64,000 nucleotides of DNA from Klebsormidium nitens (lineage: Eukaryota; Plantae; Klebsormidiophyceae), in NCBI GenBank assembly GCA_000708835.1, contig DF237431.1:6590-70589 (forward strand), in the 5' to 3' direction. The translations under genes and the position numbers were made by a program. Position 1 is the first letter of the stretch; each line of letters opens with the position of its first letter. Under the pieces are notes generated by a model that searched no databases, had not been told where the DNA came from, and saw only the letters and a program-made list of their open reading frames with translations. Below are positions 4,924 through 42,900 of this stretch, in pieces.

Positions 4924-7900
4924 TCAGCAGCTACTCAAGAAAGCAAAAAAGCAACAAAAAGGCCTTGTGTCGCAGACGATGCACCAGAGGCGCCAGGCCC
5001 ACCTGCACTCCAGAAGCTTTTGCAAGGCCTCCTCCTCAGGCGTCCACGTCATCTGCCGCAACATCTCCTCTTCCTGGACCTCCCCCCACTTCCGCTTCTT
5101 CGGGGCGCCCATCATCTCCTTCTGCTCCTGCCGGACCGTCTCCTGATGAACCGTAAGCCCCTCCTTCCCTGAATTTTCACTCTCCGGGGCCTGTTCCAAG
5201 GATTCAGGAGCAGCCTTCTCCGTCTCGCTCGGCGCAGCCCCGGCCTCGGGAACCCCCTCCGGAGCTTTCCTCTGCGGGATGCGCGCCCGCACGCCTTCCT
5301 GCGCGCTCTCCTCCGCCTGCGCTTGCTCCCGGTCCTGCTCCGGAGACTCCGGCGCAAAGCCCAGGAAGCCGGCGGTCGGTGACGTCAGCCAGTTCTGGTC
5401 GCCGGGAAGGTCCTCCACGGCTGGGAAATCGAGGATGTCGCCGATGTCCAGGTTGGCCGTCCCAGCGGGGTTCGACTCCCCAGGCCGCTCGCCAGGTTTC
5501 TCGCCAGCTTGCGTGGTTTGTCCAACTTCTACGAGAGGTCCCACTTCGCTTGCTTGGCCCTCTTGATCCGGCGGACCCGCTTCGACGGACTGCACGAGTT
5601 CCAATGCCCTCATCGTCTCTGTGGGTTGCTCAACTTCGGGGGCTTCTCCGAGTTCCTCCCGCCTCTCTTCCTGCCCGCCCCCCTGCTCCGCCTCCGCTCT
5701 CTTCTCCCCCTGCATGCGGTCCTTCCGAGCCTGCAGCCACGCCAGCCGTTTCGCGCCAGCTGTCACGCTCTCCCGCAGCCACGCGGGCACCATCGAGCGC
5801 CGCGCCTGCAGCTTGCGCACCGTCAGCTTGCGGAGCATCGCCTCCTCTTCCTCCGACAGCGGCAGGCTGTCGCGCGCAGCCCGCTCATCCTCGCCCAACA
5901 AAAGCTCGCTGATGGGGGGCGAGAGAGCAGGGAAGCCGAGCTGGGGGTTCGGGGCTCCCAGGGCCAACACCGCAGGTTCTTCTGGTATTTGGATTGAGGT
6001 AGTGGCAGGTGCAGGCAGGCTGTTTTTCGTGGGAACCCCCACAGGGAGGCTTTCCCTTGGTCGAGTGTCTGGTTCTGACACCGCCTCTACCCCGCCCTCT
6101 GCAACAGAGACTGGACCCGGCTCCTGGGGGGCAGCGACATCGCCGTTTGACTTTTCCATGGGAGTAGCCGTTTGAGTGCCCGCTGACCCCCCCATGTACT
6201 TGAGCATGGCCGCCGCATGCTCCGAGTGCGCGGCCTGCATCCGCCCCGGGCCCTCTTCCGGATTCTGCGAGGCGACCTGCTTCGCAGCAGGGGGCGCGCC
6301 GGCCTGGGCCTCCCGCAGCTTGTAGCGCCCCCCCGCCACCTCCTCAAACAGCCCGCACTCCAGCGCCTGCTGCAGCTTCACCTGCCCTTCCTCCGTGTCC
6401 AGCGGGAACTTCGACCACTTGCTCAGGAAGCTCTTGACCTCGTCCCGGCTTAGGCCCGCCTCGCCCGCCGGCTTGAACACCCGCGCACACTCCTCCACGA
6501 ACAGGACGTCCATGTCCTGCTTCCCCGCGCCCTTCTTCTTGGGCTGCTTCGGCTTGGGCGCCGGCTTCGGAAGGATCGGCCGGAACATCGGCCGACCGGC
6601 GTTGCTCGTCTGGGCGCGCGCGGCTTGCATTTGCTGCTGCATGTACAACGCCGCTGGAACCGCAACCTGGATGGGAGCACCCAAATGGCTTCTCCTAGCA
6701 GGGGGGCCCGGGCGCTGGTCGGATAGGGGGGTGCTGCCGATAGATAGGGGCGGGGCACCCGGTGGAGCCTTCTCGCCTGGTGCGTGCAAGTGCGCGACCT
6801 CGTATATGACGTTTGCGGCGGCCCCTTCGTCGTTGATCATCAGCTTCGTGGCAGGGCAGCCCGGAAAGGTGCAGGAGTAAATGCAGCCCGCACTGCCGTT
6901 GTCCCGCCTTTCCGCCGCCATCAACCAGTCGTACACATCCTCCACAGGGACCCCCTGGTAAACCTTCCCGAGCACTACAGCCTGGGGGGGAAGTTGCGGC
7001 GAGCGTTGCGCGGCTGGCGTCGGATTGGGGGCTCCGGTGCTGCCAGCTGGCAGGGACGAAGAGATCGACGGTGCGCTGCCCCCTGGCGCTGCAACCGCGT
7101 CGGTGACGTCCATGGGCATTGGGCCCTGACCATTTTCAATCAGATATATTTCTGGCTCGGTTGTCCCGTCTGGTCTCAGCTCCGGAGGTCTCTCGGCAGT
7201 GGCTGCTACACCGTTGGCCACTGGTAGCTGCAGGGCGAGAGGCCTAACCACGATCCCCGCCCCGACAGCCGGACCAGCCGACGGGCCCCCGTAAACGAAC
7301 CCGCCAAGAACGTCCCCCCTGCTCGAGCTCGGTTCCCCCGTTTCCTGTGGACCAGCACCGCTCGTGCCGGGCGCCCCGTCGTCCCCCTCCACACCGTCTT
7401 GAAGCAAGACCGCAACTGGCAGAGCTTGCTCCACTAGCGAAGGGTCCATGTCGACAATCATGTGCTGAGGGCCCCCCTCCATCATCTGCTTCGCCCGCTT
7501 CTTAGGCACGACTCCCGGTTCCCCAACTTTCCGCTGTCTCGGCCCGGTCCCGTTCGCCGCCCTCTCCTCGGCCGCTCTCTCCTTCGCAGCGGCCTTCTCT
7601 GCCGCTGCCTGCGCCCTCTGAGCCGCTTTCTCCGCTGCTACCCGTTTCTTCTCCGCCTCCTTCTGCTCCCGTGCCAGCTGGACCTGCTGCCGTTTCTCCG
7701 CGAGCTCGGCCTTCCACCCGTCCTTCTCTGCCGCGAGACGCTTTCTCTCCTCGGCCGCAGCTTCCATCTCCTCCTTGGTTCGGCGAGGCTTGGGGGTCGG
7801 GGCCGGCTTCTTCACTCGGACAAACGTCTCCATCTTCTCGGCGCGCTGCCGGGTGATTAATTGGTAGGCGTCTTGCCTGCGGGACATGAAAATATTGTTT

Positions 7901-10900
7901 AGCATTGAGCGAACACCCTGACCACAAAGACTACAAAGGAGCCTGCCGCATAAAAAGCTTGAGGTATTCCTGACGACTACTCTGGTCAAAGAAGCACTCG
8001 ACTCCTTGGACTGATCGACCCTGCCCCCCAATACAGCGGCGCGGGCCTCAGATCGGCTGATCAGGAACCTCCAGAAACCAAGTGGGAAGCCTTACAAGGA
8101 AACACAGCATCTGCTCATCTAAAGTCTCTAAGCAACCACATGATCCAGCTAGTGCGAGTCGCTCCTTGCCTGCCAGCTTTCATCCAGCAGTGCCAGGAAC
8201 AAGGTGGACAAAACCAAGGGTTCGTACCTGTACTGCTCAGCGTCCGTGATTGGAGAGGCCTTGTACTTGGCCACCCACTCCTCGACCAGGTCCCACTCCT
8301 TGAGCGCCTCAAGCTCCTCCTTCTTCGGCTGGTTCAGTACCTTGGGAGCCGCCATGTTATTCCCCTCGGGATGTAGAACCGACATGCCAGGGTCGGCGTG
8401 CTCCTTACACAGCATGGGCATGACGGCGCCTGCAGCAGCGAACGGAGGCCCCACGTGAGTCAACGTGCCTCCTAACAACAGCTTGGCTGGTCCTTGCGAG
8501 AGAGTAATCTTGACAGTTGGCCTCCTTGAATTTGTCCTGACACATATTGGAACCAAAAATTGCTGGGTGAGGTGAATCCAGGCATTTGGCAAGTGAAGAG
8601 AATAGCAGTGAAGGAGGCCTCTGGAGTTCAAGCTGGAGGTCAAATAGGGCTGCGGTGAAGCAAGTTGACGCGCACTGCTCTCACCTTCCGGCCCCATGGT
8701 CGCCCGGGCTGCGCACCCGAGCTTGAAGCAGCGGTCGTATGTGTCCTTCTTGCCGATCATGCCGCAGGCCGTGTGCCAGGAGCAGGCTAAGCGGAGGGAG
8801 AACCCAAAGATGCCGTTGGAGCCCGTCCTCTGGCAGCCCTCGACCCAGCACATCTTCCTGCGGTCGGCGTTCTTGGAGTGCATCTCACATAGGATGCCCT
8901 CTGGCATGCGCTCGCGCTTGCATTGCACGCGGCCTCTCAGCGGGCTGCAAGGTGGGATGGGGTAGTGACAAGAGTCAGGAAAAGTTGCCTTGCAAATGTT
9001 TGATCTAAAGAACCAGAGATTGTTACAAGTGATGGCAGATCGCCTCACCCAAAGAACGGCAGATGAAGCAGAGGAGGCAACCCGAAACTGTGTTCAGTAG
9101 GCAAATTGCGTCTCTCAACCTTTGTTGTCCTTGTGAAGTCCGGACAGCACATGAACACGGCATCCAAGACATAGCAAACTCAGACTACCTTGAATCACGC
9201 AAAAGGGAGGATGCTTCTCAGACCAGTCCGGTCCGACCGCGCAGACAACGAAGTTTTTGGCTTTCAAAGTAAAAGCAGGATCATGATCGTCTTCCTGCTC
9301 TGCGCAGCTAAGCGATCTAAGCGAAATAAGAGAGATGGTCTCCTCACTGCTGGGCCCAATACGTGCAGCGCTGCTCGTCTGGCACCGGGGGCACTTCGAT
9401 GGTTGGGGCAGCCACCGTGCCTTCTTTTGCCTTCTGCGCCCTCCGCCTCCGAAGCTCTACGTGGTGCTCGCACTGCTTGTACCCTTCCTTGCGGGGCCGC
9501 TTACACCTGCGCTGCTGCCCGATGCCAAAATCCCGGCTGTAGAACGTGCATCGCTCCTCGTCCGGGGGCACTGGCTCCGCCTGCTCAGTAGGCTTGGTGA
9601 ACCTGGGGACGGGACACGGTGTGTACGCTCGTAAGCTGCTGACTGGGGTTGTAAGAGTTCTAATGAAGCAAGTTAATGCTACGAACTCCAAGAAGGGGTC
9701 AGGCAACTGGCTTTCTGAGCACTATCCCATGATCTGGGCAGGACTCTCGCAGTGCATATAAATAGAAGCATGAACAACTCAATCGAGTCTTGCTGTCTTT
9801 CCTTTCAAAGAATTAAGCAGGAGGGCTCGGAGTTTGGAACATGCTCCAACTGTTGGCAGAGCCGAGAGACCTCAACAATGAAAGTAGCACTTTCCTTCAC
9901 ATTTTGATCATGATAGGAAAACAAGACCTTGAGGAAGGTAATCAACCCCTCCAAATCACCTTTTGCTTGTAAGTGGCAATCTTGTTACTCAAACAGGTTC
10001 TGAACAATGAGAACAAGCAATTCACCACGGGACTGTTCTACAGCCTCGGCCCTCCTTCCCATGAGCCTTGCAACCTATTACCCTAGCTAGACTGAGGCTC
10101 GTATACAGGTCTGAGTTCCTTTCCCAACTGCAGAGTTTCTCTCCCAACCGGGAAGCAACGCCCCAACTTGAGACGGCTCTAACTGGCGCAGGGCAAGTAA
10201 GCATCAACAGGATACATTCTCACCGTTTGCTCTCCCTGTCATTTGCCACCATGCCCTCCTCCTTATGCACCTCGCAGTGTGTGACTGACTGGCCAGGCCA
10301 GCCATATCGGGCATGCTTGAAGCACTGCAAATCATCCCTGCAAGAGATGAGCCAAAGCGGTAATGAGGCAATCGTCTTGGAGGAACCGTCAGTTAAGCAC
10401 CGTACTCAGCGAGGTGGTCAAGGATGGACTTCGGAATCACTAGCCAGGTCAAATTTATTTGACCATCTTTGCATTCAAAAACATTCTGTAGTCAGTGACC
10501 ATGGATTGGTCCAGATCAGGCATTGACAAGAGCTCAGCTTGCATCTTCAATAGGAGCTCACCTGTCAATTCAAACTGAAAGTAAAGTCTGAAGTGAAAGG
10601 CAAGTGTGGATAGGAAATGCTGTGGGCGACTAGAGTCACCATGCTATAAACAAATACACAGCTCGGACTGTGTTCTGAAATTACTGAGAATACTTCACAA
10701 TAGCAGCCACATTCAACAGTGCTCCTAAGCCAGCACCTACTGCCATTATAGTTTGATACAAGATGGAGCACCAAACTGCATAAAAATCCCTTTTAAAGCG
10801 ATCGTACATACGACATCATTCTGAATCTATAAGCAGACTCGTCTCAATGCGGTAAGAAAGAACCATGCTGCTCATACCTGGCACATAGAAACGTCCTTGA

Positions 10901-11501: not shown

Positions 11502-11656
11502 CAACCCAGTCTCGTGCCTAAAATGGACGATCTCTCGGTTAAGTCCACGGCATCGATATCGATGGATCGACCAAGTTGAAACGGTGCAGTTCCCAAATCG
11601 ACTTTCGAGTTACCGTCCGATTTGCTTCCGGAAGACGACGACACCGACGACGACGG
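11502..11656 (+). repeat. Left terminal inverted repeat
   Basis: By hand alignment, about 104 of the first 122 nt match the reverse complement of 23583-23732. Contains the palindrome CATCGATATCGATG and an inner (GAC)n tract. Confidence 0.9.
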
Positions 11657-11851
11657 AAAGGCCAAAGGCGCTAACTCATGGGGCCTCAGACTTGTCTGAC
11701 CAGAGAAGTTCTAGGCTCAGCCTAGAGTCTAGGCTGGATGCTCAGTGTCCAGAGCAGGCTTTCATGCCGAGGCGCTAGCTGTGGCTCTGGAGGTCAGAAC
11801 AGGCTTGCTATTCGAGGTTTTGGAAGTTTGGTGAGGTTTTAGGGAAAGATC

Positions 11852-14800
11852 ATGGCTTCAAGCATGTCAGAGGAGTGCTCTGACGAGGCATTGGAAGGAG
11901 AGGTGTCCAGTCCATCTCAAGAATCATCTGAGCCCCATACCAGCAGTGGGCAGCACATTCCTGCTAGTTCTTCCTCAGATCTGTCTCCTCAGGAAGAGGG
12001 GGCTCTGGGGTCAGACAGTGAATCACAGGCAGCTGACTCTGAATCTGCGAGTCCTGAGGTTGTAACTTATGATGCCCAGGGTAGGCGGGTGGTCAAGAGA
12101 CACCGTCCAGGGACTCGGGAGGCAGCCAACAAGCGAGCAAACTCTGGGAACCAGCACGATGGGTCCCCTGACTCCGGTGGAGCTGGTGAAAGGGGGAGCA
12201 GGCAGTCCGAAGATGAATCAGACGGTCACAGGGAAGCAAGGGCAGTTGAAGCTGAACAGCGTGCAAGGGCAGAGGCGGTCAGGGCTGCGGCCACAGCGGC
12301 TGCCATGGCAGACTACTTTGAGGGGGGCGAGCCTTGCTCTGATGAAGGTTCAGATGGGGAAGAAAATTTTGCGGAACCGAGGCCGACGAGGTGGAGACAG
12401 CGTACAGCTGCGGCTTACGACCAGTACAAGGAGCAGCGTCCATGGCTTGCGCGAGAGATGCTGAGAGCGCATGCTGTCCCAGGTGCTTCAGTACAGTGTA
12501 GCAGGTCTGGCTGCAGCAGTCCGGTCGCCATCAAGTGTAGGACGTGTGGGCTTGTTTGCGCTTCTTGCGATCAGGATCTCCACCCCCATGCTCACTTCCA
12601 TCACCGTTGGTCTCTCCGGGAGGGGCACTGCTGGATGCCCATTGGTCCAGATGTTGAGCTTAGGGAGGGCAGCTTGACCCGGGTGGCAAAGGTGTTCCCG
12701 CAGCCTCCAGCGCAGCCGTGCGAATCTTGTCAAAAATGTAATTGGGGTGCAGCTGAATCAGCCCACGAGCCTCTGACAGTCGTGACGCTGGAAGGTCGCT
12801 TTGAGTTCTGCAAAGCTGTGCACCCTTGCTGCACAGAGGGGTGTAAGAACCGCGTTCTCCAGGGGTGTCCGGCGTTTGTGCAGCTAGGCTTTTGGCCGGG
12901 CACTGTGGCAAAGCTCAGGACTGTGTACGAGATCGGGATGCTGGAGCACTGGGCGACGGCAAGCAAGGCAATGCCTGGCTCCTCCCTATCAGCCTTCGTG
13001 GGGGTGCTTGAGGAGACCGGAAGAAGGCAGGGCAGGGTAAGGCTTGATTTGAGCTGCTTTCGCTCGCTCCCATTTGTACTTGCTCGCTCCCATCTACGAA
13101 ACCATGTCCTTTCTGGCTGAAAGGGATAACTTGGGCGTTTGTAACGTTTCCACCTTTTGGTTGCTTTAAGAAGACCACGTGACATGCAACGTATGGTTGA
13201 TATAAAGTAGGAACTCGATGTTCCTTTCACCAAAACCTGAATAATCCGCAGGTGGCAGATTCATTGATCTCCAGTGCAAGTTGAAACGGATCTTTTATAC
13301 CCACTTGCTTGTTGGACAAAAGAGTCATACGGTTTTGTTTTTAATCCTTCACATAATCTTCTGTGTAACCAAGTTCTGCACATAGAAGCTTGCAATGATC
13401 ATCATCGACCTCGCTTTTCAGAGTAGAAGTTACTGATCTTTTGCGAAAGCATACTCTGAAAGGAGGTTCTGCCGGGTGACTTCGGTGCACCCTCCTCTAA
13501 GGGTTGAAGAAAGGTTTGCTAACTCCTGCCACTCCGTTTAGAGAATGATTTCAATGAGGCACTATACATGCCTCAGCATCTCACTTCGTCTCCTTGCTTA
13601 TCCTCAGGATGCTCCGATCAACCGCCACACCATGTCGCTGGCCTTTGGGGAGTTCAAGTTCGCGCGCTTCGAGCTGAAGTATCTCAACGCTCACCGCTCC
13701 GGTCTAGACTGCCCGGCGTGCCACAGGCATCCGCACTCGTGCATGTGCGACGGGAACCACAAGCTCTACCGGTGGGATCGCGCCTACGAGGTGTTTCGCC
13801 AGTGCTACTACGGTGACCTCCTTCTCTACAGTGATGCAGACGTGCAACAGAGTCTGGCTCACTTGGACCTAGCCATGGGCAGCCGGCCCCGTGATACATG
13901 CTGCGGAACCGGGGAGTGGAAAGCGGCCAGGGACTCGAAGAGTGCCATCCGGGGTCAAGCAGAGACCGGGTGTGTACTATGCGGGTGTCGCCACCAGTTT
14001 GCGATGAAGGGCGTGAACATGCAATACAGCGGCGAGCGCTACGGATATGCCTACTTCCTGGACCGCCACTTTCTGCAGCAGAAGGGGGTGAAGTTTATCT
14101 ACCAGGACATCATTTGCAAGTACTTCCCCTGGCGGGAGAAGGTGCGAGAGAAGATGGGGCACGGGGACGGTGGCGGTATTCGGCCTGCCCTGAATCTTAT
14201 GCATGGAAAGCTCCATTCGTGGGAGTGCCAGGTGAGATTACTTGAAGACCAATTTTGGAGGTATATATCAGTGAACAAGCGGTGGTTTAATATGTCTCTT
14301 TGTTGGTCCCTCTCACCATGTAAAAACATTTCAAGGCAGCCGACGACATTGGGTACTTTTTGAAAGTCAGACCTGCTTCCTTCTTGGGGCAACGTTCTCG
14401 CTTCTAATCGGATACGAATCCGGTTGAGTGTCCTGATCGGCCGGCAATCAATTGGTTTAGCTCGAAAAACCAGGAAACCTGTTGCGCTTTACAGATGCTG
14501 ACGTGGCAGAAAAGTGAAGTTGAACGATTATCATGTTTTCTGCCTTTGTTCTTTCTCTTCAAATGGACAATAACCTGCCGGATATATTGTTGCGGGCCCT
14601 GGAGTAGAAACGTTTCTGCCGTTGATTGTGAATGGTCAATCGAAGCAACCCTTAATGAGGTGCCTACGTTTTGCTTCATCTCCACCGTAGGTACTCTTTG
14701 GAGGACTTTGGCAGGACGGTGCGGGCGCGGGCTCTGGCGAAGACATGGAACTCCTCTTCTCCTACCTCTCACGACTCGGCATCATCACAAAGCTGATGGG

Positions 14801-16969
14801 AGCAGCAAGTAAGCACACACGCATAACCCAGAACATGGATGCTTTGAGCCGATTCAGATAGTTTTGCAAAGAATTCCGCAAGTCCAGGGCCTCCGTTAGC
14901 ATTGTCTTCAAGTTCGCGCTGCTCTTTTGAACAACTTCCTGCACGTTTCTCTAGAGTCCCTTATGCTGCCATTTGCACGCATGCACCACTACAAGTGTCT
15001 TTAATGAAGAGTTCTTCAATCGCAGACTCATTAAAAACTTGTTCCATGTTTTCGCAGGACGAGCCGAGGCGATCACCGAAGCAGCCTTGTACTACAACGA
15101 GGAGAAGCTCCGGCATCTGGCACAGTCGTTGGCAAGGAGGTATGCCTCTGAAATTTTCACAGCTGAACCCACATGAAATCTGCATAAGTTGATCACCGAC
15201 GATGCAAGCTCTTGATCCAACGCCAAATAATCGCATTTGTTTTCCAGAGTTTTTGCCACAGCGCTCCGTGAATGACCTGATCAGTGAACCATCTTTTGCA
15301 AAGTTTCGATCTGGTCGTTTTCAATACGGTTTATATGCGATGGACAGGGTTACCAGCTTTATCAACCAGTTGTTTCACCGCATTTGAGTTTGTCCGTATG
15401 ATTTTTGAGCTGAGCACATCATTTCCTATGTCAAACGGACCCCTTTTTAAATGTCGTATGTAGGCCCTGTCAAACGTGGTGCTCCAATTCTGATTGTTCC
15501 GAGCTATTTGCGTATTTCGAGTTTTAACTGATCATTCCCGTCGTTCTTGGTCGGGCAGGTACGAGGAGTGTCTCAAGCGACTAGGCGATGCGGCCGTAGC
15601 GCTGGAAACCGCTTGCCGCGACATACTCGGTGTGCCGGCTGGTGAGGTGCCGCTAGAGCAATTCGAGGAGTGGAAGGCGGGGGTGCAGGAAGCTGCTCGG
15701 CGGAAGCTAGACCGGACGCTCCATCAAAGGTCAGACGGGGTTGAGTACTTCGCCCTGTACACCGAGTTGGAACTTGCACGGGGGCTGGAAGAAATCGCGG
15801 ATTCGGAATCATTTTCGGATGGTGCTTTGTGCTCGGAGAAGGTACAGTCAGTTCAGCAGCTTACAGCGGAGATGTTGAAAGACAGAGCTTCGAAAGAGAA
15901 GAAGCTGCTCGATCTCGGGAAGAAAGTGTTTGGGGCGGACTATGTCGAGAGGCGAGGTAGCCCCGAGCAAGAGCGCTTTCTGCGGGAAGCCAGAGTGCAG
16001 CTAGCGGAAGAGACGATTCAACAGCTGCAAATTGACCTCGAAGCCCAGCTCCACTCTCTTGAACGTTACAAATTGCGGGTTTCGAAGGAGGCTGACTCGG
16101 CCAAAATGAGGGCTTCTCTCCGAAGAAAGGAGGGCGAGATCAAGAAGCAGATTGTCGCTGCGGTCGGGCGGTACAACCGGCTGCTCGACCTGCAAATCTC
16201 GCCGAAAGAGCGGGATCGTGCTGATGCTGATTCTCTTCTGGCCGGCGAGGAGCTGCCTTGGTCATTCGAGGGGTGCGTGGACCCGAGCTTCAGAGTTGGG
16301 GTTTCGATGCATAGGACTGTGGAGTTCAGGAAACAGCTAGAGTTATTAGACGCTTACAATAGGCTACGCCGCTTGGAGGAGGAAGAGCTGTTACTGAGAG
16401 CAGAAAGGGATAATTACCTTACTTATTACACGGAACTCGTAGCGTCCTTAGACATGCAGATTGCTGAGGCTCAGGAGAGTGTTCGTAGGGCTGGTACGAC
16501 TCCTCGACCAACCTTTGAGGCCGTTGCCCAGTCGGGTAGGTACGTTGCTCCCGCCACTCTTTTGTGGTCTGATCAGGATGCATCAAGTGGTTTCCTTGCC
16601 ATTCTGTCGGCGGCGCGGTTCGAGGCTCTAAAGTATTTGAGACTGGGTCGGATACAATTTGGTCAGGAAACAAGCACACGGGCAGCGGGCAATGAGTCGG
16701 ACGATGTGTACGCCGAAGTAGACCCTGAAGGGTTGCCAACAGGTTTAGGAGCTGCGCCAGAACCGGAGGCGTCTTGGTCTGAAAACGTAGTGAGCCCGCT
16801 TCGGATCTGGCTACTAGCTAGGAACCTTGACGGTCATTTGCCCCCCGAGGTCATAGAGAGTTTGAATCTTGACGATTTGAAGTGGATGACCAACACGGAT
16901 CTGGTACACTTAGGCATGTCGTTAGGCGCTCGGTTAAGGTTCCTAGACGCCATTAAAACCCTTGCTTAA
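11852..16969 (+). CDS. KDZ transposase (B-box-like/CxC3-like Zn clusters + KDZ catalytic domain + helical region + C-terminal SAM domain), 1139 aa predicted
   Basis: join(11852-13036,13608-14231,14691-14808,15058-15139,15559-16969) = 3420 nt, all GT-AG and in frame. Motifs: CxC3-like LGFWPGT...PGSSLSAFVGVLE; KDZ CPAC...CDGNHKL, CGCRH, YQDIICK, MHGKLHSWECQ, GAGAGSGEDMELLFSYLSRLG, YNEEKL..L...L.RRY; SAM-like LRIWLLARNL...LNLDDLKWMTNTDLVHLGMSLGARLRFLDAIKTL. Confidence 0.9.
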
Positions 16970-18297
16970 ACCGTTTGCTGAGATCAATAATCTCGGATTC
17001 CGAAGTTTTGAGCACTTCATCCGAGTTTCAGTGTCAAGGCATAGTGGTGACCGAGTAGAACTTCGGAAGTTCTGGACCATACCGTACGAGAACGTCATCA
17101 CTGGTGCATGCATTTCGAGTCCTGTCAATGCACAGTGTTGGCGGTGCAATTAATGAACAGATTGCCGCACAAGTCCGGACTCTATCGACATGGCCGGGCA
17201 CTTAATTGCTACTTCGTGCCTTGCCAACTTTGCCTCAATGTTGCGTGCTCCAATGTTGGTAAACATAGACAAGCAATGGTTTTAGGAACAAGCTATAGCA
17301 TGTGCCAGCATCATCTGACGGAAGATGCCAAGTACTGCAGTAATTGTACAATTGAGTATTGAGCAGGCATAGAATCCAATTTTAACTCGAATGCCTGCAT
17401 TATCGGCCGGAACCATGCAAGGGTGCCGCAGTCGGGTAGCTTCACCAGACTTTATTGCGGAATTCGTTTGTTACTAGGGTATGGTATGCGGGCTGGATCA
17501 TCGATCCACCATGTGCATATATGTGCAATCAAGTCGAGCACACGAAAAGCCCTACTCTTACCTATTGCACACTGACAATGATATATGGCATGGATGCAGT
17601 GCGCACGTACGTTTTAGGATCGATTGTGGTCTTGAAGTTCTTGATTGCGTATCAATGAGTCCATGATGCCAGCATGCACATATTCTTATGAAAATGGATG
17701 ATTATGATGCATGATCGTGGATCCAACATGACCCTACGTCCATAACTATACTGAGAAACTAGAGAGCTGACGATAAACTCGCAGTGCACGGTTGTATGTT
17801 GGTATAGTATAATCAAGCAGCTCGATCGGACATGAGTATGATCGATATAGGTAGGCATATGCAAACATGTAATTAAGTTGAAGGTAGCGGCCAACTTGTA
17901 GAAGACAGCTCAGTGTTGAGTCTGTATTACCGAGTACGACTCGAGCGAGGCTCGACTAATTGAGATTCGCATGGCTGCACATGAGCTACTAGTGGGCACC
18001 GACTTCACAATTGAAAATGTGTTGCTGCTTTGCCGTGCCACCTTAATGCTTCCAGGCGCGGTCCGATGATTAAGTCTGTCACGAAGCTACTGTGTGTGGA
18101 CTCGGGATCGTTTTTAAGTACTCATTGAGGTTCGGCATCATGGGTTTGATCGAAGATGCTGAGGGCCTGTCAGCTAGTGCCAAACTAAGTTGTCGCTATG
18201 TGCACCATCATGGGCAGAGCTTCGAAAATTCAATCAGATGTCATTACTCATGCACACATTGAACGAGCTTAGCAACGTCCAAACGTTACAATATATC

Positions 18298-19076
18298 CTA
18301 GGGTCCACTGTTTGCCCACTTTTTCACGGCTACTTTAAATAACATCCGAGGACCAGCCTTGTCCCCGAAAATCGAGTTCAACCAATCTTTATCATCAATC
18401 AACTCTTTCAGACTCGCTTCATCCACTTCCCCAGATTCTAGACACGCAAGAACCTTGCTCCTCAGGGTCTCCTCCATATTCAAGGAGGCTACAAAGCTAC
18501 GAAGGCTTTGTGGCAAGCTATACGACGAGCTTGAAGGACCGGGAACACTAGCAGTATTCGGCGGTCCATTAGCTGAAGTGTGAGCCTTGCTCTGGTCGCC
18601 TTTTGAGGTTTTCTCCTCGCTCTGATCTTTCTTCGCTTTCTTATATACCCTTAAGGCCCTTTTGTACGACTTCTGGACGTCATCGCTGCCAACCCAGGAA
18701 CTGCCGAGGTCTCCGAAACCCAGAAAGTGAGCTTCCTTGCTCTTTGACTCTGCCTTCCTTCCTACCTTTCCGAGAGAGGCGCCGGATTCCGTTGAATCGT
18801 CATACCAGACCAAGCTTGTTTGAAAACCTTTTTCGGACAGAAGCATAAGGTCGTCTTTGATCCGGCGTATGATTCCTTTTGTGTCTTTAACGGCGCTCAC
18901 TTTCTTTTCTCGTTTCTCCTCCTGAGCGCGTCGGCGGAAGCTTTTGACGTCGAAGCCGCACGTCTTGCACTTGTTTGCAGCGGACGGGACCAAACCGGGG
19001 CAAGGGGGTATTGTATTGCTGGGGCAAGGGCGTTCCTTCGGAGCAACTTTCTTTGACTTGCGAGCGGGAGAAAGAC
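18298..19076 (-). CDS. Terminal exon of a transposon cargo gene: basic linker, Zn-ribbon-like Cys motif, C-terminal SAM-like domain
   Basis: Acceptor (ccgtttcag) at 19077 and an open frame to the stop at 18298: ...KERPCPSNTIPPCPGLVPSAANKCKTCGFDVKSFRRR...SLRSFVASLNMEETLRSKVLACLESGEVDEASLKELIDDKDWLNSIFGDKAGPRMLFKVAVKKW. The tail fits the SAM pattern (L.sL.l......f....id...L..L...dl......G.R..i..ai). Confidence 0.7.
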
Positions 19077-20935
19077 CTGAAACGGCATGGATTGATACGT
19101 CAAGTTATGTGCGAGGCACTTCGCGCATAACGCTTAGAGCTCCAAAGAGGTTCTCTCGAGCCAGCTGGAAACGGAAAGGCCCGCTCGTTCGAGCTTGAGC
19201 ATGCGCTCACACAGAAGTCGGCAGCCAGAAAAGCATCGCAGGCTGCCTCAGACCACGAGCTGTCCGCAAGGATGTGGATCATTTCAGGTGGATGCCTTCA
19301 GTGATCATCCGAGGGGTTCGAGAAGTCTTTGCCCCAAATGACGTTCTTGGCAGCCCTCTAACTTCCCATCGCTAGCCAGTTTTTCTCTTTCCTGCCCCCG
19401 ACTTCCTGACGAAGGAGTGTCCCCTTTTTGCAAGTTTCCACCGCTTTGAACGAGTCAAAGCATACAATGAACATTGAGAAGCGCGATGTGCCAACTTTTG
19501 GACCTCCGGTAGAGAGCCTAACAAAGGGATCACTTGCGGCGGACTTCTTTCTGGTGAACTCTCGTGAGATGACACCAGGGACTCACCAGGACTCGTTGAT
19601 GGCTTCGGGGTTTCGTTCGCATGCCGGCTTGTTCTTCTTGGAGAAGTCCACCTTTCCCTCCTCTGTCCGGGGCTGCTTACTGGGGCTCCGGTCTCTGTAC
19701 CAGACAGGGCCGAAAGAGAAACGAGGTTTGCAAGAAACGAAAGTGCACTGATTGGGAAGTGATGGCCAGTCGCAACATCGTTGAGATACAAACGACGCTG
19801 AAACCATATTGTTGAATTCTGAAGGTATCGCATCAACCACAATTGTCGACATCGAACCCCTTTTCTTGATCCACTTCCAGTTCCCCTTTTTGGGCCGGCA
19901 TCAAATACCGTTTGAAACAGATCGAGGAGCGTAACTGGTCCTTAGGCGTGGGAGTTTCCAGCGTTAAAAAAGAGAGAAGTCCATATATGCTGCCCCTAGT
20001 CTAGGCTTGCCAGATGTTTGCAAGGTTCTCGGCTGAGTTGCTGGGCTGTGTAAATAAAGGATATACAATGACACCCAGAGTCCTCCCCAGTATTGGCTGA
20101 CCCGAAGTCCAAAAGATCCGGTGTGAAGCATAATTGTTGGGCCCCTGATCATACGAAACCGTTTAGGACTGCCAACGGTAGGAACGGAACGGCTCTGATC
20201 TGCTTCAATTTTGAAGTAGCCACGGCCATTAGGAGGGACTTACGAGACGGTGGAAACGATGAAGGGGTAGGATCAGGCCCGGTCGGTCTCCGAGGAGACA
20301 TCCGCCGCTCCTCTGCTTGGGGAATGTCCGCAGTCTGAGAAGGTCCCCCGCCTGGAGAGAAGAAACACCGGGCCAGGTTTAGAAAGGGGACGTACATCGT
20401 TGTCGAAGTTCGATCGCTGCGAACGAAGGCGCGCTCGGCCAGCCCAGCTCGCGCGATGAGCCTTAGAAGCTGGGCCAAGAAGAAACAGCTTGCTTATATC
20501 TCAAAATACCCAGAAAATAAAATGGAAATTGAAAGACTACATGATGCTGCCCGCACGGTTTAGCACTGCCAAGGCTTCCACAGCAAATTCCACTTTGCCC
20601 AATCATGGAGAAGAGGCCACACTTCTGATGTGCGCAACCATAGAAAGTCAAAGCCGAAACTCAAATAACTACCGCTATTTCCATTACGGGACATCTTAAT
20701 AACGTAAGCGAGATCTGAACTGATGATGACAATGGCATTATTAATCTCCGCCTCCAGATCAGCTCAAATGATTGCTGAGATGCAGCGAGTAGGGGAACTG
20801 CACATGTAAGCGTTCTCCCTCACCTTCCTTCGCGGTTGACCCGGTGGTCTCATTTGCCTTTTCGGGAGATTGTCCTTTGTCCGCTCCCAAACCGGCGGAC
20901 TGCGATAGCGGCTCCGCTCCTGAAAAACGGTGTTT

Positions 20936-20989
20936 CGGTTTAGAAGCGTGCGATGTGTGCATCGGTTTAGAAGCGTGCGATGTGTGCAT
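20936..20989. repeat. Perfect 27-bp tandem duplication
   Basis: cggtttagaagcgtgcgatgtgtgcat x2; length is a multiple of 3. Confidence 0.95.
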
Positions 20990-22697
20990 CAAAAGCCAAG
21001 CCGGTGGATCAAACACAGATAGTTGCAGACTCTTCAAAAGCTCCAGCACGGGACTCCTTTCAAAGACGATAAAGAGTGGAAAAGGAGCAAAGGGGGAAAC
21101 AAGGAGGTCAAGCAAATCCTGAAGGCTGATGGCTCATTCGCAACAGCTGCTCCAAGCTCCCGAGAGATTACTTACGAGAAGATGGAGTAGTAACCCCTTC
21201 GGGGCTCTCGGTCCGCTTTGATGTGCTAGGACCTTGTGCAGGACCGTTTGCAGCACTACGATGCATCTCGGGGAACAGAGACGCCCCTGAAGGAAAGGGT
21301 TGAGTGTTTAAAAGCGGACAGACTACCAAGTCAATGAAGTGGGGCAGGCCACCAGAATAATTAAGGTTACCCAAATCCCCCAAGTGCAGATATCTAACTA
21401 TGGCGGCTCTAAATCTTATCACGAGGCACTCGACCGATTGGAGAACGACCTTGAGCACTACGAAGTGAAACAATCGAGCACAGCTTGAGCTTTCCGCAGG
21501 TCACAACTCACGTGGTGACCTTCGGACAGAATGCACAGGCTGTGGAGCTGGTGACAAGCTCCGCCGGTTGGCTGCGGGAGATGTTGGCGAAGCACGAGCT
21601 CCCTTCTTGTCAGCTGCAAATAGTTGTAAACATGTTTGAGACTCTAATATATGGAACCAAGACCAGGCATCCACACAAGTCTCTTCTAGGGTAACTGTCT
21701 GCTTGAGATCTGCCCTACTAGAAAACCGAAAGAGAGTACTTCCTTGCTTGAATTCCACTGAAAACTGAGAGCCCGCAACAAGCCTGCTCAGATTGTCGAG
21801 TAACAAAATGCCCCTTGCCCCCTGCGCTCATGTCTTCTGCGAGGCCCAATAGAGGACCAGGTAAACAAGCAGACGTTTCGATAGAGAGCAAGCCAATTGG
21901 ACATCAAACTGCTTCTACCTCGTGTGAGTCCGTTACTAAATCTCAGATGATCGTTACATCTAATTTGGAAGCAGTAGAAGGACAGATTGGCTGATGAAAC
22001 ACCTTTTCAAGAGAGCCCAGTTCATTGATACTTTGCAGCCCAAGAAACAATCAACCGGCCGCCCTTCGGGCCTTCAGTAGATAAAAGCTTTTGGATCAAC
22101 TGGGAATTCGTTGCTTTACATACCCGAAGAGAACAGGGCCACCGGTATACAAAGAACATGCCTTTGCAGAGCAGTAGCTATTATAATAATTGAGTCTGCA
22201 CGCAAGAATGGTGGCCACTCACCTGCGCCGCTTGGCTCCGTGTCTTTCGTTTTCCGCTTTGTCATCTTGCTCCGCTTCTTTTGTACGACTGATGGGGCAC
22301 CTGCGCAAGCAAACCTCAAAGGGTGTGAACAAGCTGATCTGTGGACTGCCACAAACAAAAGCAACTTGACAGGCGACGGCGTCGTGCTTGAACAAGTTTG
22401 AGAAAGTCTCTTTGTCAATGGCAACTGCAACATGAAGTGAAGGTTCCCTGCTGGCATGTCTGCTTGTGCATTTGTTTTGCTGCCCAAAGCCTTGAACATC
22501 GGAAAGGAGACACTTGAGCTTGATTTGTAAGCATGTCACTGACCTGGCACCACCTCTTTATGACTCTTTCCCAACTCGCTCGCTTTTCGCTTTCTCCCCT
22601 GCGTTTCTGCAGTGAGCAAAACACCTGGATCAAAATCCAACCCTTTCTGCAATGGTCCTTCGAAACTTTGGAAGCTTACATCCTGTACATCGCATCC

Positions 22698-23444
22698 TCA
22701 TCGCATACGACGCGGCTGCCGTCGAAAACCGTCAAGCGAGTGACAATAGCATGCACCACTGGCATTCAGGTATTCAAGTTGGCCAACAGAATGTACAATG
22801 GCAAAGCATGTAAGACCGTGTTCCAACCTCCAGAAAGTTGTTTGTATGCTGTCTGGCGACGACTCGATTCTGTCACAGCATTGTGCAAGACGATACTGAC
22901 AGCAAACGATGAATGCTGAGAGCTTTTTGAACTGATGCAATGGCCCGATTGTCGCTGACTGCTGACCTGCGCTGCCGTCACGTGCGGTGCCAGCTGCACA
23001 CTCCTTCACAAAAGCTTGAAACCCGATTCTTTCATCTTTTTGAATACTTGAGACTTCCGCCATCTGCTTGTCATTGTATCCCAGTTTCTCCTGCAGCTTT
23101 TCCCAACAGTTGGGTGCTTCCTCCAAAGGCAAGCTTGCCACCTCCACGCTAATTGCTCTAAAGACGTTGGCCATGTGCACTAAGCTAACATTATGTTTCC
23201 TGTGTATCCTGGGAAATGAGTTAGCTGGTTTCCCAATCTTCTTCCAGTAGAACTTAATGTCATCCTCTGTGATTGACAATGAAATGTCCTCCTTAATGTT
23301 GGCGGAATGTGCTGCCATCCCGCTTCCCTGCTTCGTCTTGATTTCTGAGTGGGCAAACGTTGCGGCAACAACCCCAGCACCAGCAGCACATCCACCCAAT
23401 CCTTGTACCGTGGTGCTAATTAATGCAGCATCAGATTGCTCCAA
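22698..23444 (-). CDS. Probable 5' coding exon(s) of cargo gene(s) just inside the right TIR; product unknown
   Basis: 248-codon ORF starting ~140 bp inside the right TIR, with protein-like helical composition (DDIKFYWKKIGK...NCWEKLQEKLGYNDKQMAEV). Further minus-strand splice-flanked segments lie between 19300 and 22700, but I could not join them unambiguously. Confidence 0.4.
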   Translation of the reverse strand: MEQSDAALISTTVQGLGGCAAGAGVVAATFAHSEIKTKQGSGMAAHSANIKEDISLSITEDDIKFYWKKIGKPANSFPRIHRKHNVSLVHMANVFRAISVEVASLPLEEAPNCWEKLQEKLGYNDKQMAEVSSIQKDERIGFQAFVKECAAGTARDGSAGQQSATIGPLHQFKKLSAFIVCCQYRLAQCCDRIESSPDSIQTTFWRLEHGLTCFAIVHSVGQLEYLNASGACYCHSLDGFRRQPRRMR

Positions 23445-23582
23445 GCAGGGAAGCTGGCGGCACCTTCTAGCTGGCCCACTCTGATTCTGAAGCCAAGCCT
23501 TCCCAGTCAGATGGTTCAGATTGCATGCTGAGGGTCAGGCTGTGCCACCCAACATGTGAGCTGGGGTTCTCGATCTTAGTTA

Positions 23583-23732
23583 CCGTCGTCGTCGTCGGTT
23601 TCCAGAGGCAAAATCGGACGGTAACTCGAATTTCTATTTGGGGACTCTACCGTTTCAACTTGGTCGGTGTATCGATATCGATGCCTTGGACTTAACCGAG
23701 GAATCGTCCATTTCAAAGGAGAGACTGGGTTG
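23583..23732 (-). repeat. Right terminal inverted repeat
   Basis: Reverse complement caacccagtctctcctttgaaatggacgattcctcggttaagtccaaggcatcgatatcgat... aligns with the left TIR. The ORF track also shows near-identical spurious peptides (NPVS.LKWTI.RLSPRHRYR..DQVETV) at both places. Confidence 0.9.
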
Positions 23733-23961
23733 TCCTCAGAGACGATTTTGAATTTCCCACTTTTGAGATTTGACCGTTTCCTTTTGGACCCGGAGAAATC
23801 CTCGTATGAACACAAGAAACAATTGAATATGTGCCGAAGGTAATTATGAGACAGGCGCTTTGTAGAGCGTTTCTACTTATATTATCTTTTAATTCTAAAT
23901 TGGTCCATTATCCGATCCGCACAAAGATCTGCGGGTTCCGGAACCTAGATGAACGCCAATT

Positions 23962-39937: not shown

Positions 39938-42900
39938 ATGATTGACCTGACACAGGAAGACGTCGCGCTGGACGCATGCGATTCAAATCCTGGCAATAAC
40001 AAAGCAACATCACAAGGAAGCAAGGTTAGTCCTTTTCTTCAATTCAAAGCAAGTTTCCCGATCTGAAATTCTGCTTCCTGCAATCCGCCAGTCACCGAAG
40101 AACTTCCAGACATAGCGAGGTTCATACAAAACCATGCGTGCTGCCATTTGCTGCTACCACAATGTTTGTGAACAGAACCCTTCTTTGCTGCAATCAAGTT
40201 GCTACTTCCCAATGTCATCTGGTACGTTTCCCCCTCTTCATGAGGACAGGCCCGGCAGAAGAGGTGTGGTTTGACTGCACCAAGTCCATTGAATCACTCA
40301 AATTAAGGAAGTGCATTTTGTTCATGTGAAAGTTACACTCTGTCTTTGGGAAGCATACCACCATTTTAAGTCAGCCATCGCGGTGGGGTTGGACCGTGGA
40401 ATAGAGTCTGGTTCTGGGTCTTGCAGGAAGGAGCAAGCAGATGGAAGAAGCGGAAGGGTCCTTCAGCAGCAAGGGTAACCATCGACCTGGATTCAGAACC
40501 CCCCCGGCTTGACACCGAATCCTTCTCCCTGGCGGCTGAACCGAAGGTTTCTAGGGCTTCAGCCGCACTCAAGTTGACGCCCAAGACGCCGGTCAAACCG
40601 GTGGCAAAACGCCGCAAAAGCAGCCCTCTCCAAGCACCAGTTGCTGCATTGCTCAGAAGCTGTAAAGCTGAACAGAAAGGAAGTGGGGAGGATGCAGATA
40701 GTCAGGCGGAGAGCACAAACGGTGGGGACACCGAGGGTCACGGGGCGGAGGGCGAGGATACAGATGCCGAATGTGAATCAACAGAACTAGCATCTGCGAC
40801 ATCCAAGGTGCCGCAACCCCCCTGCGAGACAGACATACCATCGAAGCTGCCGCCAGTAGCAAACCCACGCAGCATTTTGAAGCCAACCCCAAGCCCTGTC
40901 CAAGTAGAGGGAACGGCACATAGGCCGCAGGGTGAATGGCTGCAGAATGCAGAAAGAGGATTAAAGCAGGATCCAAGCAGGCCAAGTGCTTCGGATGCAG
41001 CAGGGACGTCGCCAGCAGATACATGCCGGCCACAGGGTCCTATGTTGAATCTGCAGAGAGCTCAGCAGCAAGCAGCCCCATTGTTCAATCCTCCCCAGTC
41101 ACCAAGTGCACTTTCAGCCCCTAAATCCATCCCAAGCACTTTCCAACCGCCGCCAAACATCTCTTTGGTCCAGAAAACTCCCCCTGAGTTGAATCGAGAG
41201 TGGGAGGCTTCTGGGGCTGCGGTGCGCGCGACTCCTGCAGCGATTCCCCCCAGCAGATCCAGTGTACTTGAGCCACACGCATACGGTCAGAAAGCCCCTC
41301 CGAGCGTTGCGGCAGTCCCTCCCTGGATGTCCACCGAAACCCCTCCCAGTCAACGAGGGCCGATCAAAGGTCCAGCAAGGACAGTCATTGAGCCAGTAGA
41401 TGCGCGCAGTCCCCTAGAAACCACGATTAGGCAGAGCAAGCCACAGGCCGGAAGCGGACAGCCGAGGACTGCGACCACAAAGCCAATCAGTGATGATCTG
41501 AGCTGGCTGCCGGAGCCCGACTTCACGGAGCTAGACGCGCTGATCCTGGCGCACCAGGCGTCGAAAGAGACGTTCCGGCAGGAGGAGGAAAGGAGACGGC
41601 GAGTGGCGGAGCTTGAGAACGCCCAGGAGCGGACAGTAGCGGGAAGGGGCGGGAGAGGAGGTGTTGCTGCGGGTGTCAGTGGGAGAGGGGAAGCGATAGA
41701 GGGGCAAGGGAGGGGAGGCGGGGACAGGGAAGCTGACGCAGCAAACCAGCGGGCTTGGGAGACAGAGGAGCGGGGGGAGAGTATTGGGGAGCGGAGTGCC
41801 AAAAGGTGGGACTCTTGGCAGGGGCGTGTGGGAAGAAACGGAAACGGGGTGAGCACTTCGTGGCAGGGTGAGGGACCGGTAGGTATAGAGCGGAGTGAGA
41901 GGGAGGGACGGCAAACGCGTGTCCTGCAAGCAAACCCTCTGCAAAGCGGTTTGGGGAAGGCGAGAGAGAACGTGCCGGCGGAAGCAGTCTGGCCGCCTGA
42001 GCCAGATTTTGGAGAAGCCACACCCAGAAAGAGAGAGGCAGGGGGGCGGTCAGCTAGAAAGAAGCAGAGGGTGGTGGAGAGTGACAGCGAATTGGAGGAG
42101 GAAGATGAGCTTCCCGCTTCCTGCAAGAGGGATCCCCAGGTTCCACTGGATCCTCCCAAGTCGGAGAGGAAGCCCACGCCTGCTCCTGTGACCAGACAGA
42201 GAGCGCCCGCCTCTGAAAAGAAAGCGGGTGCCAAGCTGACGCCCAAATCGTGCATCTTGGACAGCGACACGGATGATGACGTCAGCAATGACAGTGGCGG
42301 GTCCGAAAAGAAAGTTGGGAGCAAGGGGGCGGGTTCGGACAGTCCGGTGGCAAGTTTGAAGGGGAGGGTGCTTCGGACAGTGGGCAAGGGGTCTGGAAGG
42401 AAGCCTAAGCGACTGGCTAAGGTGGGATCGGGTTATGGGGCGGGTTTCGAGACGGGTTTAGGGGAGGACCGAGTGGAGGAGGCGCTCGAGCGGCTGAGGC
42501 GCAAAGTGGCGGACGAGGGGCAGATCGTGCATGTGGAGTCGCAGCCAGCACAGTGAGTGGTATGGCTTTGGTGGTCCCCTTCAATTCTGCTTTGTACCTC
42601 TCGGCGGCTTGCTTTTATTTCTCAGTCTGAAAGGAAGGGAGAATTGACATCCGTCGGTTCAACAATTTTCTGGCAATTGGGCGCCGTTCAAATTCTTCAC
42701 TTTTCCGTCCCTTCGTTGAAAGTGCGTCCGTTTCCAAGTACCTAGATTGAGTTCCAGAAAGTTCCCGAATGGAGCGAGACTTGGGAACCACTTGTACGTT
42801 AAATGTCTGAAACTTACTCGTGCCCCTGTCGTCAACAGACCTGCCGTTCACCAAAAGTCCAAGTGGCCGCTACAGAAAAAGATCGAAGAAGCGTTGCTTG

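What the first reader, a model, noticed from the sequence alone, without database searches (positions are those of the whole stretch)
11502..23732. Twin-SAM KDZ transposon: transposase and convergent cargo protein both end in SAM domains
Seen: within one TIR-bounded unit, the plus-strand transposase ends in a SAM-like domain (~16790-16966), and a minus-strand gene transcribed toward it also ends in a SAM-like domain (~18310-18510). Established: SAM domains form homo- and hetero-oligomers through mid-loop/end-helix surfaces; KDZ elements are known to carry cargo (TET/JBP genes in fungi, SUMO-protease/Zn-finger modules in fish Zisupton). Inference: the two element-encoded SAM proteins may form a two-component system in which the cargo protein binds, caps or recruits the transposase polymer (a regulator, inhibitor or targeting adaptor). 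I do not recall this pairing being described.
Basis: partly seen in the sequence, partly recalled or inferred. Interest (0 to 1): 0.85.

Follow-up and report, generated by a model that had tools for sequence, protein, structure and literature searches.

The report
KDZ transposon with conserved partner gene
This is a real 12-kb cut-and-paste jumping gene whose cutting enzyme ends in a genuine SAM (protein-sticking) domain and which carries a second, expressed and conserved gene, but that gene's tail could not be shown to be a SAM domain, so the "twin-SAM" idea is unproven.

Summary
The element is real. TIRs of 122 nt (about 150 nt with one indel) bound 12.2 kb that two inward-facing genes fill. 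Gene 1 is a 5-exon, 1139-codon KDZ transposase: CxC3 cluster, KDZ core, long coiled coil and a genuine C-terminal SAM. One family member passes Pfam's SAM_1 cut-off, and the family profile hits the ANKS4B, Caskin-1 and USH1G SAM structures.

Gene 2 is a 9-exon, 598-codon minus-strand gene. It is spliced in RNA contigs of four runs. It sits tail-to-tail with the same transposase in a diverged metagenome copy (64-67% aa identity, no flank synteny). A third sample holds both genes on separate contigs. It is under strong purifying selection and has no other homologue among 1.84 billion representatives.

Its 75-residue, five-helix tail failed every SAM test: Pfam, PDB profile, profile-profile against the transposase SAM, Foldseek and VIA. 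Only sub-threshold language-model hits point to SAM. The complex prediction gave no verdict.

So the two-gene unit holds, and the twin-SAM pairing is not supported. No 8-bp TSD is visible.

The scan had noted this same locus from overlapping windows. It had also noted other KDZ elements with a tail-to-tail second gene elsewhere in this genome.

The parts
11502..11623 (+). Left terminal inverted repeat. Similarity continues with one indel to about 11655.
11852..13036 (+). Transposase exon 1: ATG, an acidic and Ser-rich N-terminus, and the CxC3 cysteine cluster at about 12707-13018.
   Evidence: Pfam CxC3 E 2.4e-15. GT donor at 13037 and conservation with L001.
13608..14231 (+). Transposase exon 2: KDZ catalytic domain, Pfam profile positions 5-164.
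14691..14808 (+). Transposase exon 3: end of the KDZ domain, profile positions 171-202.
15058..15139 (+). Transposase exon 4: short and conserved.
15559..16969 (+). Transposase exon 5: long coiled-coil region, the C-terminal SAM domain and the stop codon.
16787..16966 (+). SAM domain of the transposase.
   Evidence: SAM_1 at 20.8 bits in the window copy and 26.5 bits, above the cut-off of 23, in relative P0004. PDB profile hits to ANKS4B, Caskin-1 and USH1G SAM.
18214..19076 (-). Partner gene exon 9 (last). The stop codon is at 18298-18300. It encodes the Zn ribbon, a long basic helix, a middle region and the C-terminal five-helix domain.
   Evidence: RNA contigs and joints. Frames. Homologues P0001 and P0002.
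18301..18525 (-). Partner C-terminal five-helix domain of 75 residues. It looks SAM-like by eye but was not verified as SAM.
   Evidence: AF2 model at pLDDT 69.7 with five helices. Negative SAM tests. Weak language-model leads.
18958..19026 (-). Probable C4 zinc ribbon of the partner (Cys 17, 25, 36 and 39 of the exon-9 product).
   Evidence: Invariant in the window and P0001. Weak UPF0547 zinc-ribbon hit, E 0.047.
19587..22606 (-). Partner exons 8 to 2: 19587-19694, 20244-20351, 20824-20919, 21176-21286, 21512-21613, 22223-22300 and 22544-22606. All are phase-1 symmetric and encode a Ser/Pro/Arg/Lys-rich linker.
   Evidence: Eight GT..AG joints in RNA contigs of four runs.
22967..23512 (-). 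Partner exon 1: 5' UTR, ATG at 23316-23318 and an N-terminal domain of 117 residues with no family assigned. This domain is not conserved in L001.
23611..23732 (-). Right terminal inverted repeat.

Best explanation
This is a two-gene KDZ (Kyakuja-Dileera-Zisupton) cut-and-paste DNA transposon of about 12.2 kb. The two genes start just inside each TIR and converge.

Gene 1 is the transposase: CxC3 Zn cluster, KDZ catalytic core, a coiled coil of about 300 residues and a true C-terminal SAM domain. I infer that the coiled coil and SAM make the transposase self-associate so that the two ends can be paired.

Gene 2 is a family-specific accessory protein of about 598 residues. It has a variable N-terminal domain, a disordered basic Ser/Pro-rich linker, a C4 zinc ribbon followed by a long basic helix, and a conserved five-helix C-terminal domain.

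I infer that gene 2 works like the second protein of other two-gene DNA transposons (the Myb-like protein of PIF/Harbinger, TnpA of En/Spm). On this reading the zinc ribbon and basic helix bind element DNA, and a helical part contacts the transposase to help assemble or regulate the transposition complex.

Shown here: the TIRs, the domain identities, splicing and expression of gene 2, linkage of the two genes in a diverged copy, and purifying selection. Inferred only: DNA binding, contact with the transposase, and any effect on transposition.
For: - **Boundaries and layout:** the TIRs are real. The two genes fill the space between them: the transposase runs 11852-16969 and the partner 18214-23512.
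- **Transposase domains:** CxC3 and KDZ.
- **Transposase SAM:**
- **Partner expression:** spliced with eight GT..AG introns in contigs of four runs from four studies, all 99% or more identical to the window.
- **Second copy, L001:** it has the partner's last exon (64% aa) tail-to-tail with the same transposase (67% aa). Nothing outside 12.0-19.1 kb is shared, so this is not flank synteny.
- **Third sample, SRR14092358:** it holds both a SAM-tailed transposase (P0004) and a partner homologue (L002).
- **Selection on the partner:** pN 0.22 against pS 0.74.
- **Selection on the transposase:** pN 0.19 against pS 0.61.
- **Co-divergence:** dN is similar for the two genes in all three pairwise comparisons.
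- **No host homologues:** only P0001 and P0002 appear among 1.84 billion representatives, so the partner is not a recently captured widespread host gene.
- **Precedent:** KDZ1 of Cryptococcus is about 11 kb with long TIRs and carries two extra genes of unknown function (PMC11343200).
Against: - No function-bearing family was found for any part of the partner.
- The partner's N-terminal exon is not conserved in L001.
- No TIRs could be found in L001, so it is not shown that the partner lies inside the element there.
- The L002 copy has one in-frame stop.
- No TSD is visible and no second copy lies in the window, so mobility of this copy is not shown.
- The predicted complex of the two tails gave no verdict.
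- Transposase splicing is modelled, not observed.
Confidence: 0.5

Rival explanations
1. Twin-SAM two-component system. The partner's C-terminal domain is a very divergent SAM that hetero-oligomerises with the transposase SAM, and so caps, nucleates or recruits a transposase polymer.
For: The transposase SAM is real. The partner tail has SAM-like length and five helices, with a G-x3-G-P-R-x-L-F-K-x-A-V-K-K-W ending that resembles the helix-5 region of SAM. hhalign aligns just that motif to the transposase SAM. Four SAM-clan clusters are among its language-model neighbours at 0.76-0.85. The tail is the most conserved segment across all three homologues.
Against: There is no SAM hit for any of the three tails in Pfam, even at E 10. 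There is none in the PDB with the family profile. hhalign probability against the transposase SAM is 3.9% and 0.6%. The pLDDT-70 model matches no SAM structure in Foldseek or among 48,161 representatives in VIA; the best match is an mTERF repeat at Z 5.7. Atlas scores under 0.9 are leads only. The predicted complex scored 0.31, under the 0.34 mark, which counts as no verdict.
Confidence: 0.12
2. Passenger (cargo) gene with a host-directed role. The second gene rides in the element but acts on the host or on silencing (for example chromatin or RNA binding), not on the transposase.
For: KDZ and other transposons carry unrelated cargo such as TET/JBP (PMC12730594). Unchecked earlier notes of this scan report different second genes in other KDZ families of this genome. 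The partner's N-terminal part differs between copies. It is well represented in RNA contigs.
Against: The conserved part co-diverges with the transposase and is found only with it. No enzymatic or reader domain was detected.
Confidence: 0.2
3. Immobilised or domesticated gene pair. The locus is an old insertion whose two genes are now kept for a host function.
For: No TSD is visible and the TIR arms are only 85% alike. Both genes are intact and under strong purifying selection. The partner is expressed in many runs. No second copy was seen in the window or in the scan's index, although a blank there means little.
Against: Long TIRs with sharp, identical 12-nt termini are retained. The diverged copy L001 sits in different flanks. 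One sample holds at least two diverged KDZ members of the family, which is transposon-family behaviour.
Confidence: 0.12

Closest known systems
KDZ1 of Cryptococcus neoformans (KDZ superfamily; PMC11343200)
   Same: A giant KDZ DNA transposon (about 11 kb there, 12.2 kb here) with long TIRs (236 bp there, 122-150 nt here). Besides the KDZ transposase it carries extra genes for proteins of unknown function.
   Different: KDZ1 makes 8-bp TSDs and is shown to move. Here no TSD is visible and mobility is untested. The transposase here ends in a SAM domain, and the single partner gene is convergent and conserved across diverged copies. No sequence relation of the partner to KDZ1's extra genes was tested.
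Zisupton and fungal Kyakuja/Dileera elements with TET/JBP cargo (PMC12730594)
   Same: The same transposase superfamily (CxC cluster plus KDZ core) and the habit of carrying an extra gene.
   Different: The cargo here is not TET/JBP and no enzyme domain was found. The host is an alga. The SAM fusion did not appear in the papers I could search.
PIF/Harbinger two-protein transposons (transposase plus Myb/SANT DNA-binding protein)
   Same: Two element-encoded proteins are kept together through family divergence. The second is a probable nucleic-acid-binding adaptor. This is a resemblance in how it may work.
   Different: The transposase superfamily is unrelated. The partner has no Myb/SANT domain. 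No interaction or DNA binding has been shown here.
SAM-domain hetero-complexes (for example ANKS4B/USH1G-type SAM domains)
   Same: The transposase tail is a bona fide SAM, closest in the PDB to ANKS4B, Caskin-1 and USH1G.
   Different: The proposed second SAM (the partner tail) is not verified, and no polymer or hetero-dimer has been shown.

Membership tests
KDZ DNA transposon | KDZ transposase catalytic domain (PF18758) | tested here: met
   E 3.9e-17, 63 bits against a cut-off of 26.6. The domain continues into exon 3.
KDZ DNA transposon | N-terminal CxC cysteine cluster (PF18804 CxC3) | tested here: met
   E 2.4e-15, 56.8 bits.
KDZ DNA transposon | Terminal inverted repeats bounding the unit | tested here: met
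   122 nt at 85% complementarity, with sharp identical 12-nt termini.
KDZ DNA transposon | 8-bp target-site duplication (Zisupton, KDZ1) | tested here: not met
   The flanks read ATCGGTTG and TCCTCAGA, with 1 of 8 positions alike. An old insertion could have lost the duplication.
KDZ DNA transposon | Multiple copies or mobility | tested here: inconclusive
   Diverged relatives occur in other samples. No second copy lies in the window. The source genome cannot be searched with these tools.
SAM domain: transposase tail (16787-16966) | Pfam SAM_1 at or above the gathering score | tested here: inconclusive
   The window copy scores 20.8 bits, under the cut-off of 23. L001 scores 18.3 bits. Relative P0004 scores 26.5 bits, above the cut-off, over profile positions 6-63 of 64.
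SAM domain: transposase tail (16787-16966) | Family profile matches solved SAM domains over the whole domain | tested here: met
   ANKS4B SAM at 8.6e-7 over 57 residues, Caskin-1 at 4.5e-4 and USH1G at 6.2e-4.
SAM domain: partner tail (18301-18525) | Sequence match to a SAM family (Pfam, or PDB by profile) | tested here: not met
   None for the three homologues, even at E 10. hhalign probability against the transposase SAM is 0.6-3.9%.
SAM domain: partner tail (18301-18525) | SAM fold in three dimensions | tested here: not met
   The AF2 model (pLDDT 69.7, pTM 0.47) has no SAM among its Foldseek PDB, VIA-wide or atlas matches. The model's quality limits the weight of this result.
SAM domain: partner tail (18301-18525) | A five-helix module of about 65-70 residues | tested here: met
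   Helices at residues 6-14, 19-30, 36-44, 46-53 and 59-72. This is necessary but not specific.
Two-protein transposon system (PIF/Harbinger-like logic) | Second element-encoded protein conserved together with the transposase | tested here: met
   Linked in the window and in L001. Both occur in SRR14092358. dN is similar for the two genes and omega is well below 1.
Two-protein transposon system (PIF/Harbinger-like logic) | Second protein binds element DNA and/or the transposase | not testable with these tools
   The complex prediction gave no verdict. No DNA-binding family was detected beyond a probable zinc ribbon.

The most novel reading that the evidence does not exclude
The partner's conserved C-terminal five-helix domain is an extremely divergent SAM, or a new fold, that docks on the transposase's SAM and coiled coil. 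In that case transposition of this KDZ family would be controlled by an element-encoded hetero-oligomerisation switch, a mode of transposase control I could not find described.
Probability: 0.1. Interest if true: 0.75.

Novelty: new variant of a known kind. Interest (0 to 1): 0.4.

Why it matters
KDZ transposons are among the least understood DNA transposon superfamilies. No biochemical mechanism appeared for them in the papers I read. The extra genes of the only KDZ shown mobile in those papers (Cryptococcus KDZ1) are unexplained.

This locus offers a compact, intact, expressed two-gene KDZ element. Its transposase carries a recognisable oligomerisation module (SAM), and its partner gene has been kept with the transposase through deep divergence.

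That makes one question directly testable: is the second gene an obligatory transposition cofactor or regulator? The test needs only two proteins and 150-nt ends. The specific "twin-SAM" hook should not be repeated as a fact.

Tried and rejected
- **Complex prediction:** the two 74-residue tails scored 0.30-0.31 against a mark of 0.34. That is no verdict, and is evidence neither for nor against binding.
- **Metagenome scans:** scans with the partner alignment and the transposase alignment found no confirmed relatives.
- **TIR search in L001:** neither similarity to the window TIR nor self-inverted repeats gave anything convincing.
- **Partner exons 1-8 in L001:** only noise, plus one weak Ser/Pro-rich match.
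- **Fold searches:** both AF2 models gave only generic helical or coiled-coil matches at Z 5.7 or less.
- **Atlas search of the partner's N-terminal domain:** only weak EF-hand-like leads.
- **L007:** a KDZ relative interrupted by a gag/zinc-knuckle retroelement, so it says nothing about the partner.
- **L008-L010:** a more distant subfamily (34% identity) whose transposase ends without a SAM. Their contigs stop before any partner could be seen.
- **"Recently captured widespread host gene":** rejected. Only two homologues exist among 1.84 billion representatives. One is linked to the transposase. The other comes from a sample that also holds a SAM-tailed transposase.
- All searches were done exon by exon, by reference.
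Full report
**1. Is the unit there?**

Yes. The longest inverted repeat in 10.5-24.8 kb has arms at 11502-11623 and 23611-23732. It is 122 nt long and 85% complementary. Aligned end to end, both arms start abruptly with the same 12 nt, CAACCCAGTCTC, while the outside flanks are unrelated. Similarity continues with one indel to about 150 nt. A 30-nt terminal pattern occurs at only these two places in the 64-kb window, against 0.00 expected.

No direct repeat flanks the ends. The 8-nt flanks ATCGGTTG and TCCTCAGA share 1 of 8 positions. The 8-bp TSD reported for Zisupton and Cryptococcus KDZ1 (PMC12730594, PMC11343200) is therefore not seen. No second copy or fragment lies elsewhere in the window.

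**2. The transposase**

The plus-strand ORF pieces carry CxC3 (E 2.4e-15) and KDZ (E 3.9e-17). I used conservation with a diverged copy (L001) and frame-preserving GT..AG sites to build a gene model. The five exons are 11852-13036, 13608-14231, 14691-14808, 15058-15139 and 15559-16966, giving 1139 codons. The KDZ profile continues from exon 2 (positions 5-164) into exon 3 (positions 171-202), which fits the model. The splicing is modelled, not observed.

The last exon encodes a long helical, coiled-coil region and then a C-terminal SAM. Three results support the SAM:
- The window tail scores 20.8 bits on SAM_1, just under the cut-off of 23.
- The tail of relative P0004 scores 26.5 bits over profile positions 6-63 of 64.
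- A three-sequence profile of the tails hits the solved SAM domains of ANKS4B (8.6e-7, 57 residues), Caskin-1 and USH1G.

A more distant subfamily (L008-L010, 34% identity in the last exon) ends without a SAM. The fusion is thus specific to this subfamily.

**3. The convergent gene**

Contigs of four public runs, from four studies and under two organism labels, all 99% or more identical to the window, lie on 17760-23740. They show eight joints whose skipped parts read CT..AC on the plus strand, which is GT..AG introns of a minus-strand gene. Low-depth contigs also cover two introns.

The exons are:
- 22967-about 23512
- 22544-22606
- 22223-22300
- 21512-21613
- 21176-21286
- 20824-20919
- 20244-20351
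- 19587-19694
- 18214-19076

The frame stays open throughout. Exons 2-8 are all phase-1 symmetric and encode a Ser/Pro/Arg/Lys-rich linker. The first in-frame ATG is at 23316-23318 and the stop at 18298-18300, giving 598 codons.

Transcription therefore starts about 100 nt inside the right TIR. The transposase ATG lies about 230 nt inside the left TIR. The two converging genes fill the element.

The last exon encodes four parts:
- a probable C4 zinc ribbon (Cys 17, 25, 36 and 39)
- a 40-residue basic helix
- a poorly predicted middle part
- a 75-residue tail with five helices

**4. Is the partner's tail a SAM?**

I could not show it. The negative results are:
- None of the three available tails hits any SAM model in Pfam, even at E 10.
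- The family profile finds no SAM in the PDB.
- hhalign against the transposase SAM profile aligns only the last 19 residues, at probability 3.9% and 0.6%.
- The domain-only AF2 model (pLDDT 69.7, pTM 0.47) has the right number and lengths of helices. Even so, it matches no SAM structure in Foldseek/PDB, in VIA over 48,161 representatives (best an mTERF repeat at Z 5.7), or in the atlas shape search. The whole-exon model gives the same answer.

In favour are the eye-level resemblance of the ending, G-x3-GPR-x-LFK-x-AVKKW, and four SAM-clan clusters among the language-model neighbours at 0.76-0.85. Those scores are below the tool's 0.9 line.

The model is only moderately confident and the alignment has three sequences, so a very divergent SAM is not excluded. 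I put it at roughly one in three. The predicted complex of the two tails scored 0.31 against a mark of 0.34 and counts as no evidence either way.

**5. Does the partner belong to the element family?**

Yes, as far as can be tested.

The only full homologue in 5.8 billion clustered proteins, and one of only two among 1.84 billion representatives, is P0001. It lies on a 21.7-kb metagenome contig (L001), tail-to-tail with a CxC3-KDZ-SAM transposase and 2.0 kb from its stop.

Window and L001 share only the exons between about 12.0 and 19.1 kb, at 68-83% nucleotide identity. The amino-acid identity is 67% for the transposase last exon and 64% for the partner last exon. Nothing in the flanks is shared. 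This is a separate, anciently diverged element rather than the same locus.

The second hit, P0002, comes from run SRR14092358. Its contig L002 encodes the whole last exon at 51% identity but with one in-frame stop. The same run holds a SAM-tailed transposase (P0004, 55% identity) on another short contig. Linkage there cannot be shown.

Synonymous sites between copies are saturated while non-synonymous change is low:

| Gene | pS | pN | omega |
|---|---|---|---|
| Partner | 0.74 | 0.22 | about 0.08 |
| Transposase | 0.61 | 0.19 | about 0.17 |

dN of the two genes is similar in all three pairs (0.26/0.22, 0.44/0.38 and 0.39/0.39), as expected if they travel together.

There are limits:
- The N-terminal exon of the window's partner has no counterpart in L001. 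In L001 a SAP-domain ORF lies upstream on the same strand.
- I found no TIRs in L001.

**6. What it most likely is and does**

It is a two-gene KDZ transposon. The SAM and coiled coil of the transposase plausibly provide self-association for pairing the ends. This is inference from the general behaviour of SAM domains.

The partner is most likely an accessory protein of the transposition machinery: a DNA-binding adaptor, a regulator, or both. Its logic would be comparable to the Myb-like protein of PIF/Harbinger, but it is not related to that protein.

The rivals are:
- a passenger gene with a host-directed role
- an immobilised or domesticated pair, suggested by the missing TSD, the 85% TIR identity and the steady expression

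**7. Comparison and novelty**

Giant KDZ elements with long TIRs and extra genes of unknown function are on record. Cryptococcus KDZ1 is about 11 kb with 236-bp TIRs and two such genes. Cargo such as TET/JBP is known in fungi.

My paper searches found no SAM-bearing KDZ transposase and no such partner gene. The library is limited.

Earlier notes of this scan, which I did not check, say three things. The genome is Klebsormidium nitens. Other KDZ families in it carry different tail-to-tail second genes. CACTA families in it carry a SAM-plus-PHD partner. The same locus had also been noted from overlapping windows.

I did not verify the organism. The two organism labels with near-identical contigs would fit the known renaming of that strain, but that is my inference.

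I rate this a new variant of a known kind. It is of moderate interest as a tractable two-protein KDZ system, with the "twin-SAM" claim unproven.

Noticed in passing
window 20935-20990: A perfect 27-nt tandem duplication (2.1 copies, 100% identity) lies inside an intron of the partner gene.
   Followed up: no
L001 5643-6752: In the diverged copy, a 369-residue ORF with a SAP DNA-binding motif (E 4.4e-8) lies upstream of the partner's last exon on the same strand. It may be that copy's N-terminal exon or a separate gene.
   Followed up: partly
L002 3-698: The partner homologue from run SRR14092358 has one in-frame stop (in ...EKGF*VSF...), so that copy may be decaying or the contig may hold an error.
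   Followed up: no
L007 4341-5370: A KDZ relative from an ENA assembly is interrupted downstream of its KDZ exon by a retroelement gag gene with a CCHC zinc knuckle.
   Followed up: partly
L001 14663-14745: A near-perfect 40-nt-arm palindrome (98% complementary, 3-nt loop) lies in the intron just upstream of the transposase's last exon in the diverged copy. The window has nothing equivalent.
   Followed up: no
window 6001-8000 and 40001-42000: Composition outliers outside the element. GC is 64.6% at 6-8 kb, within a neighbouring gene that another reader flagged. AT skew is +0.22 at 40-42 kb.
   Followed up: no
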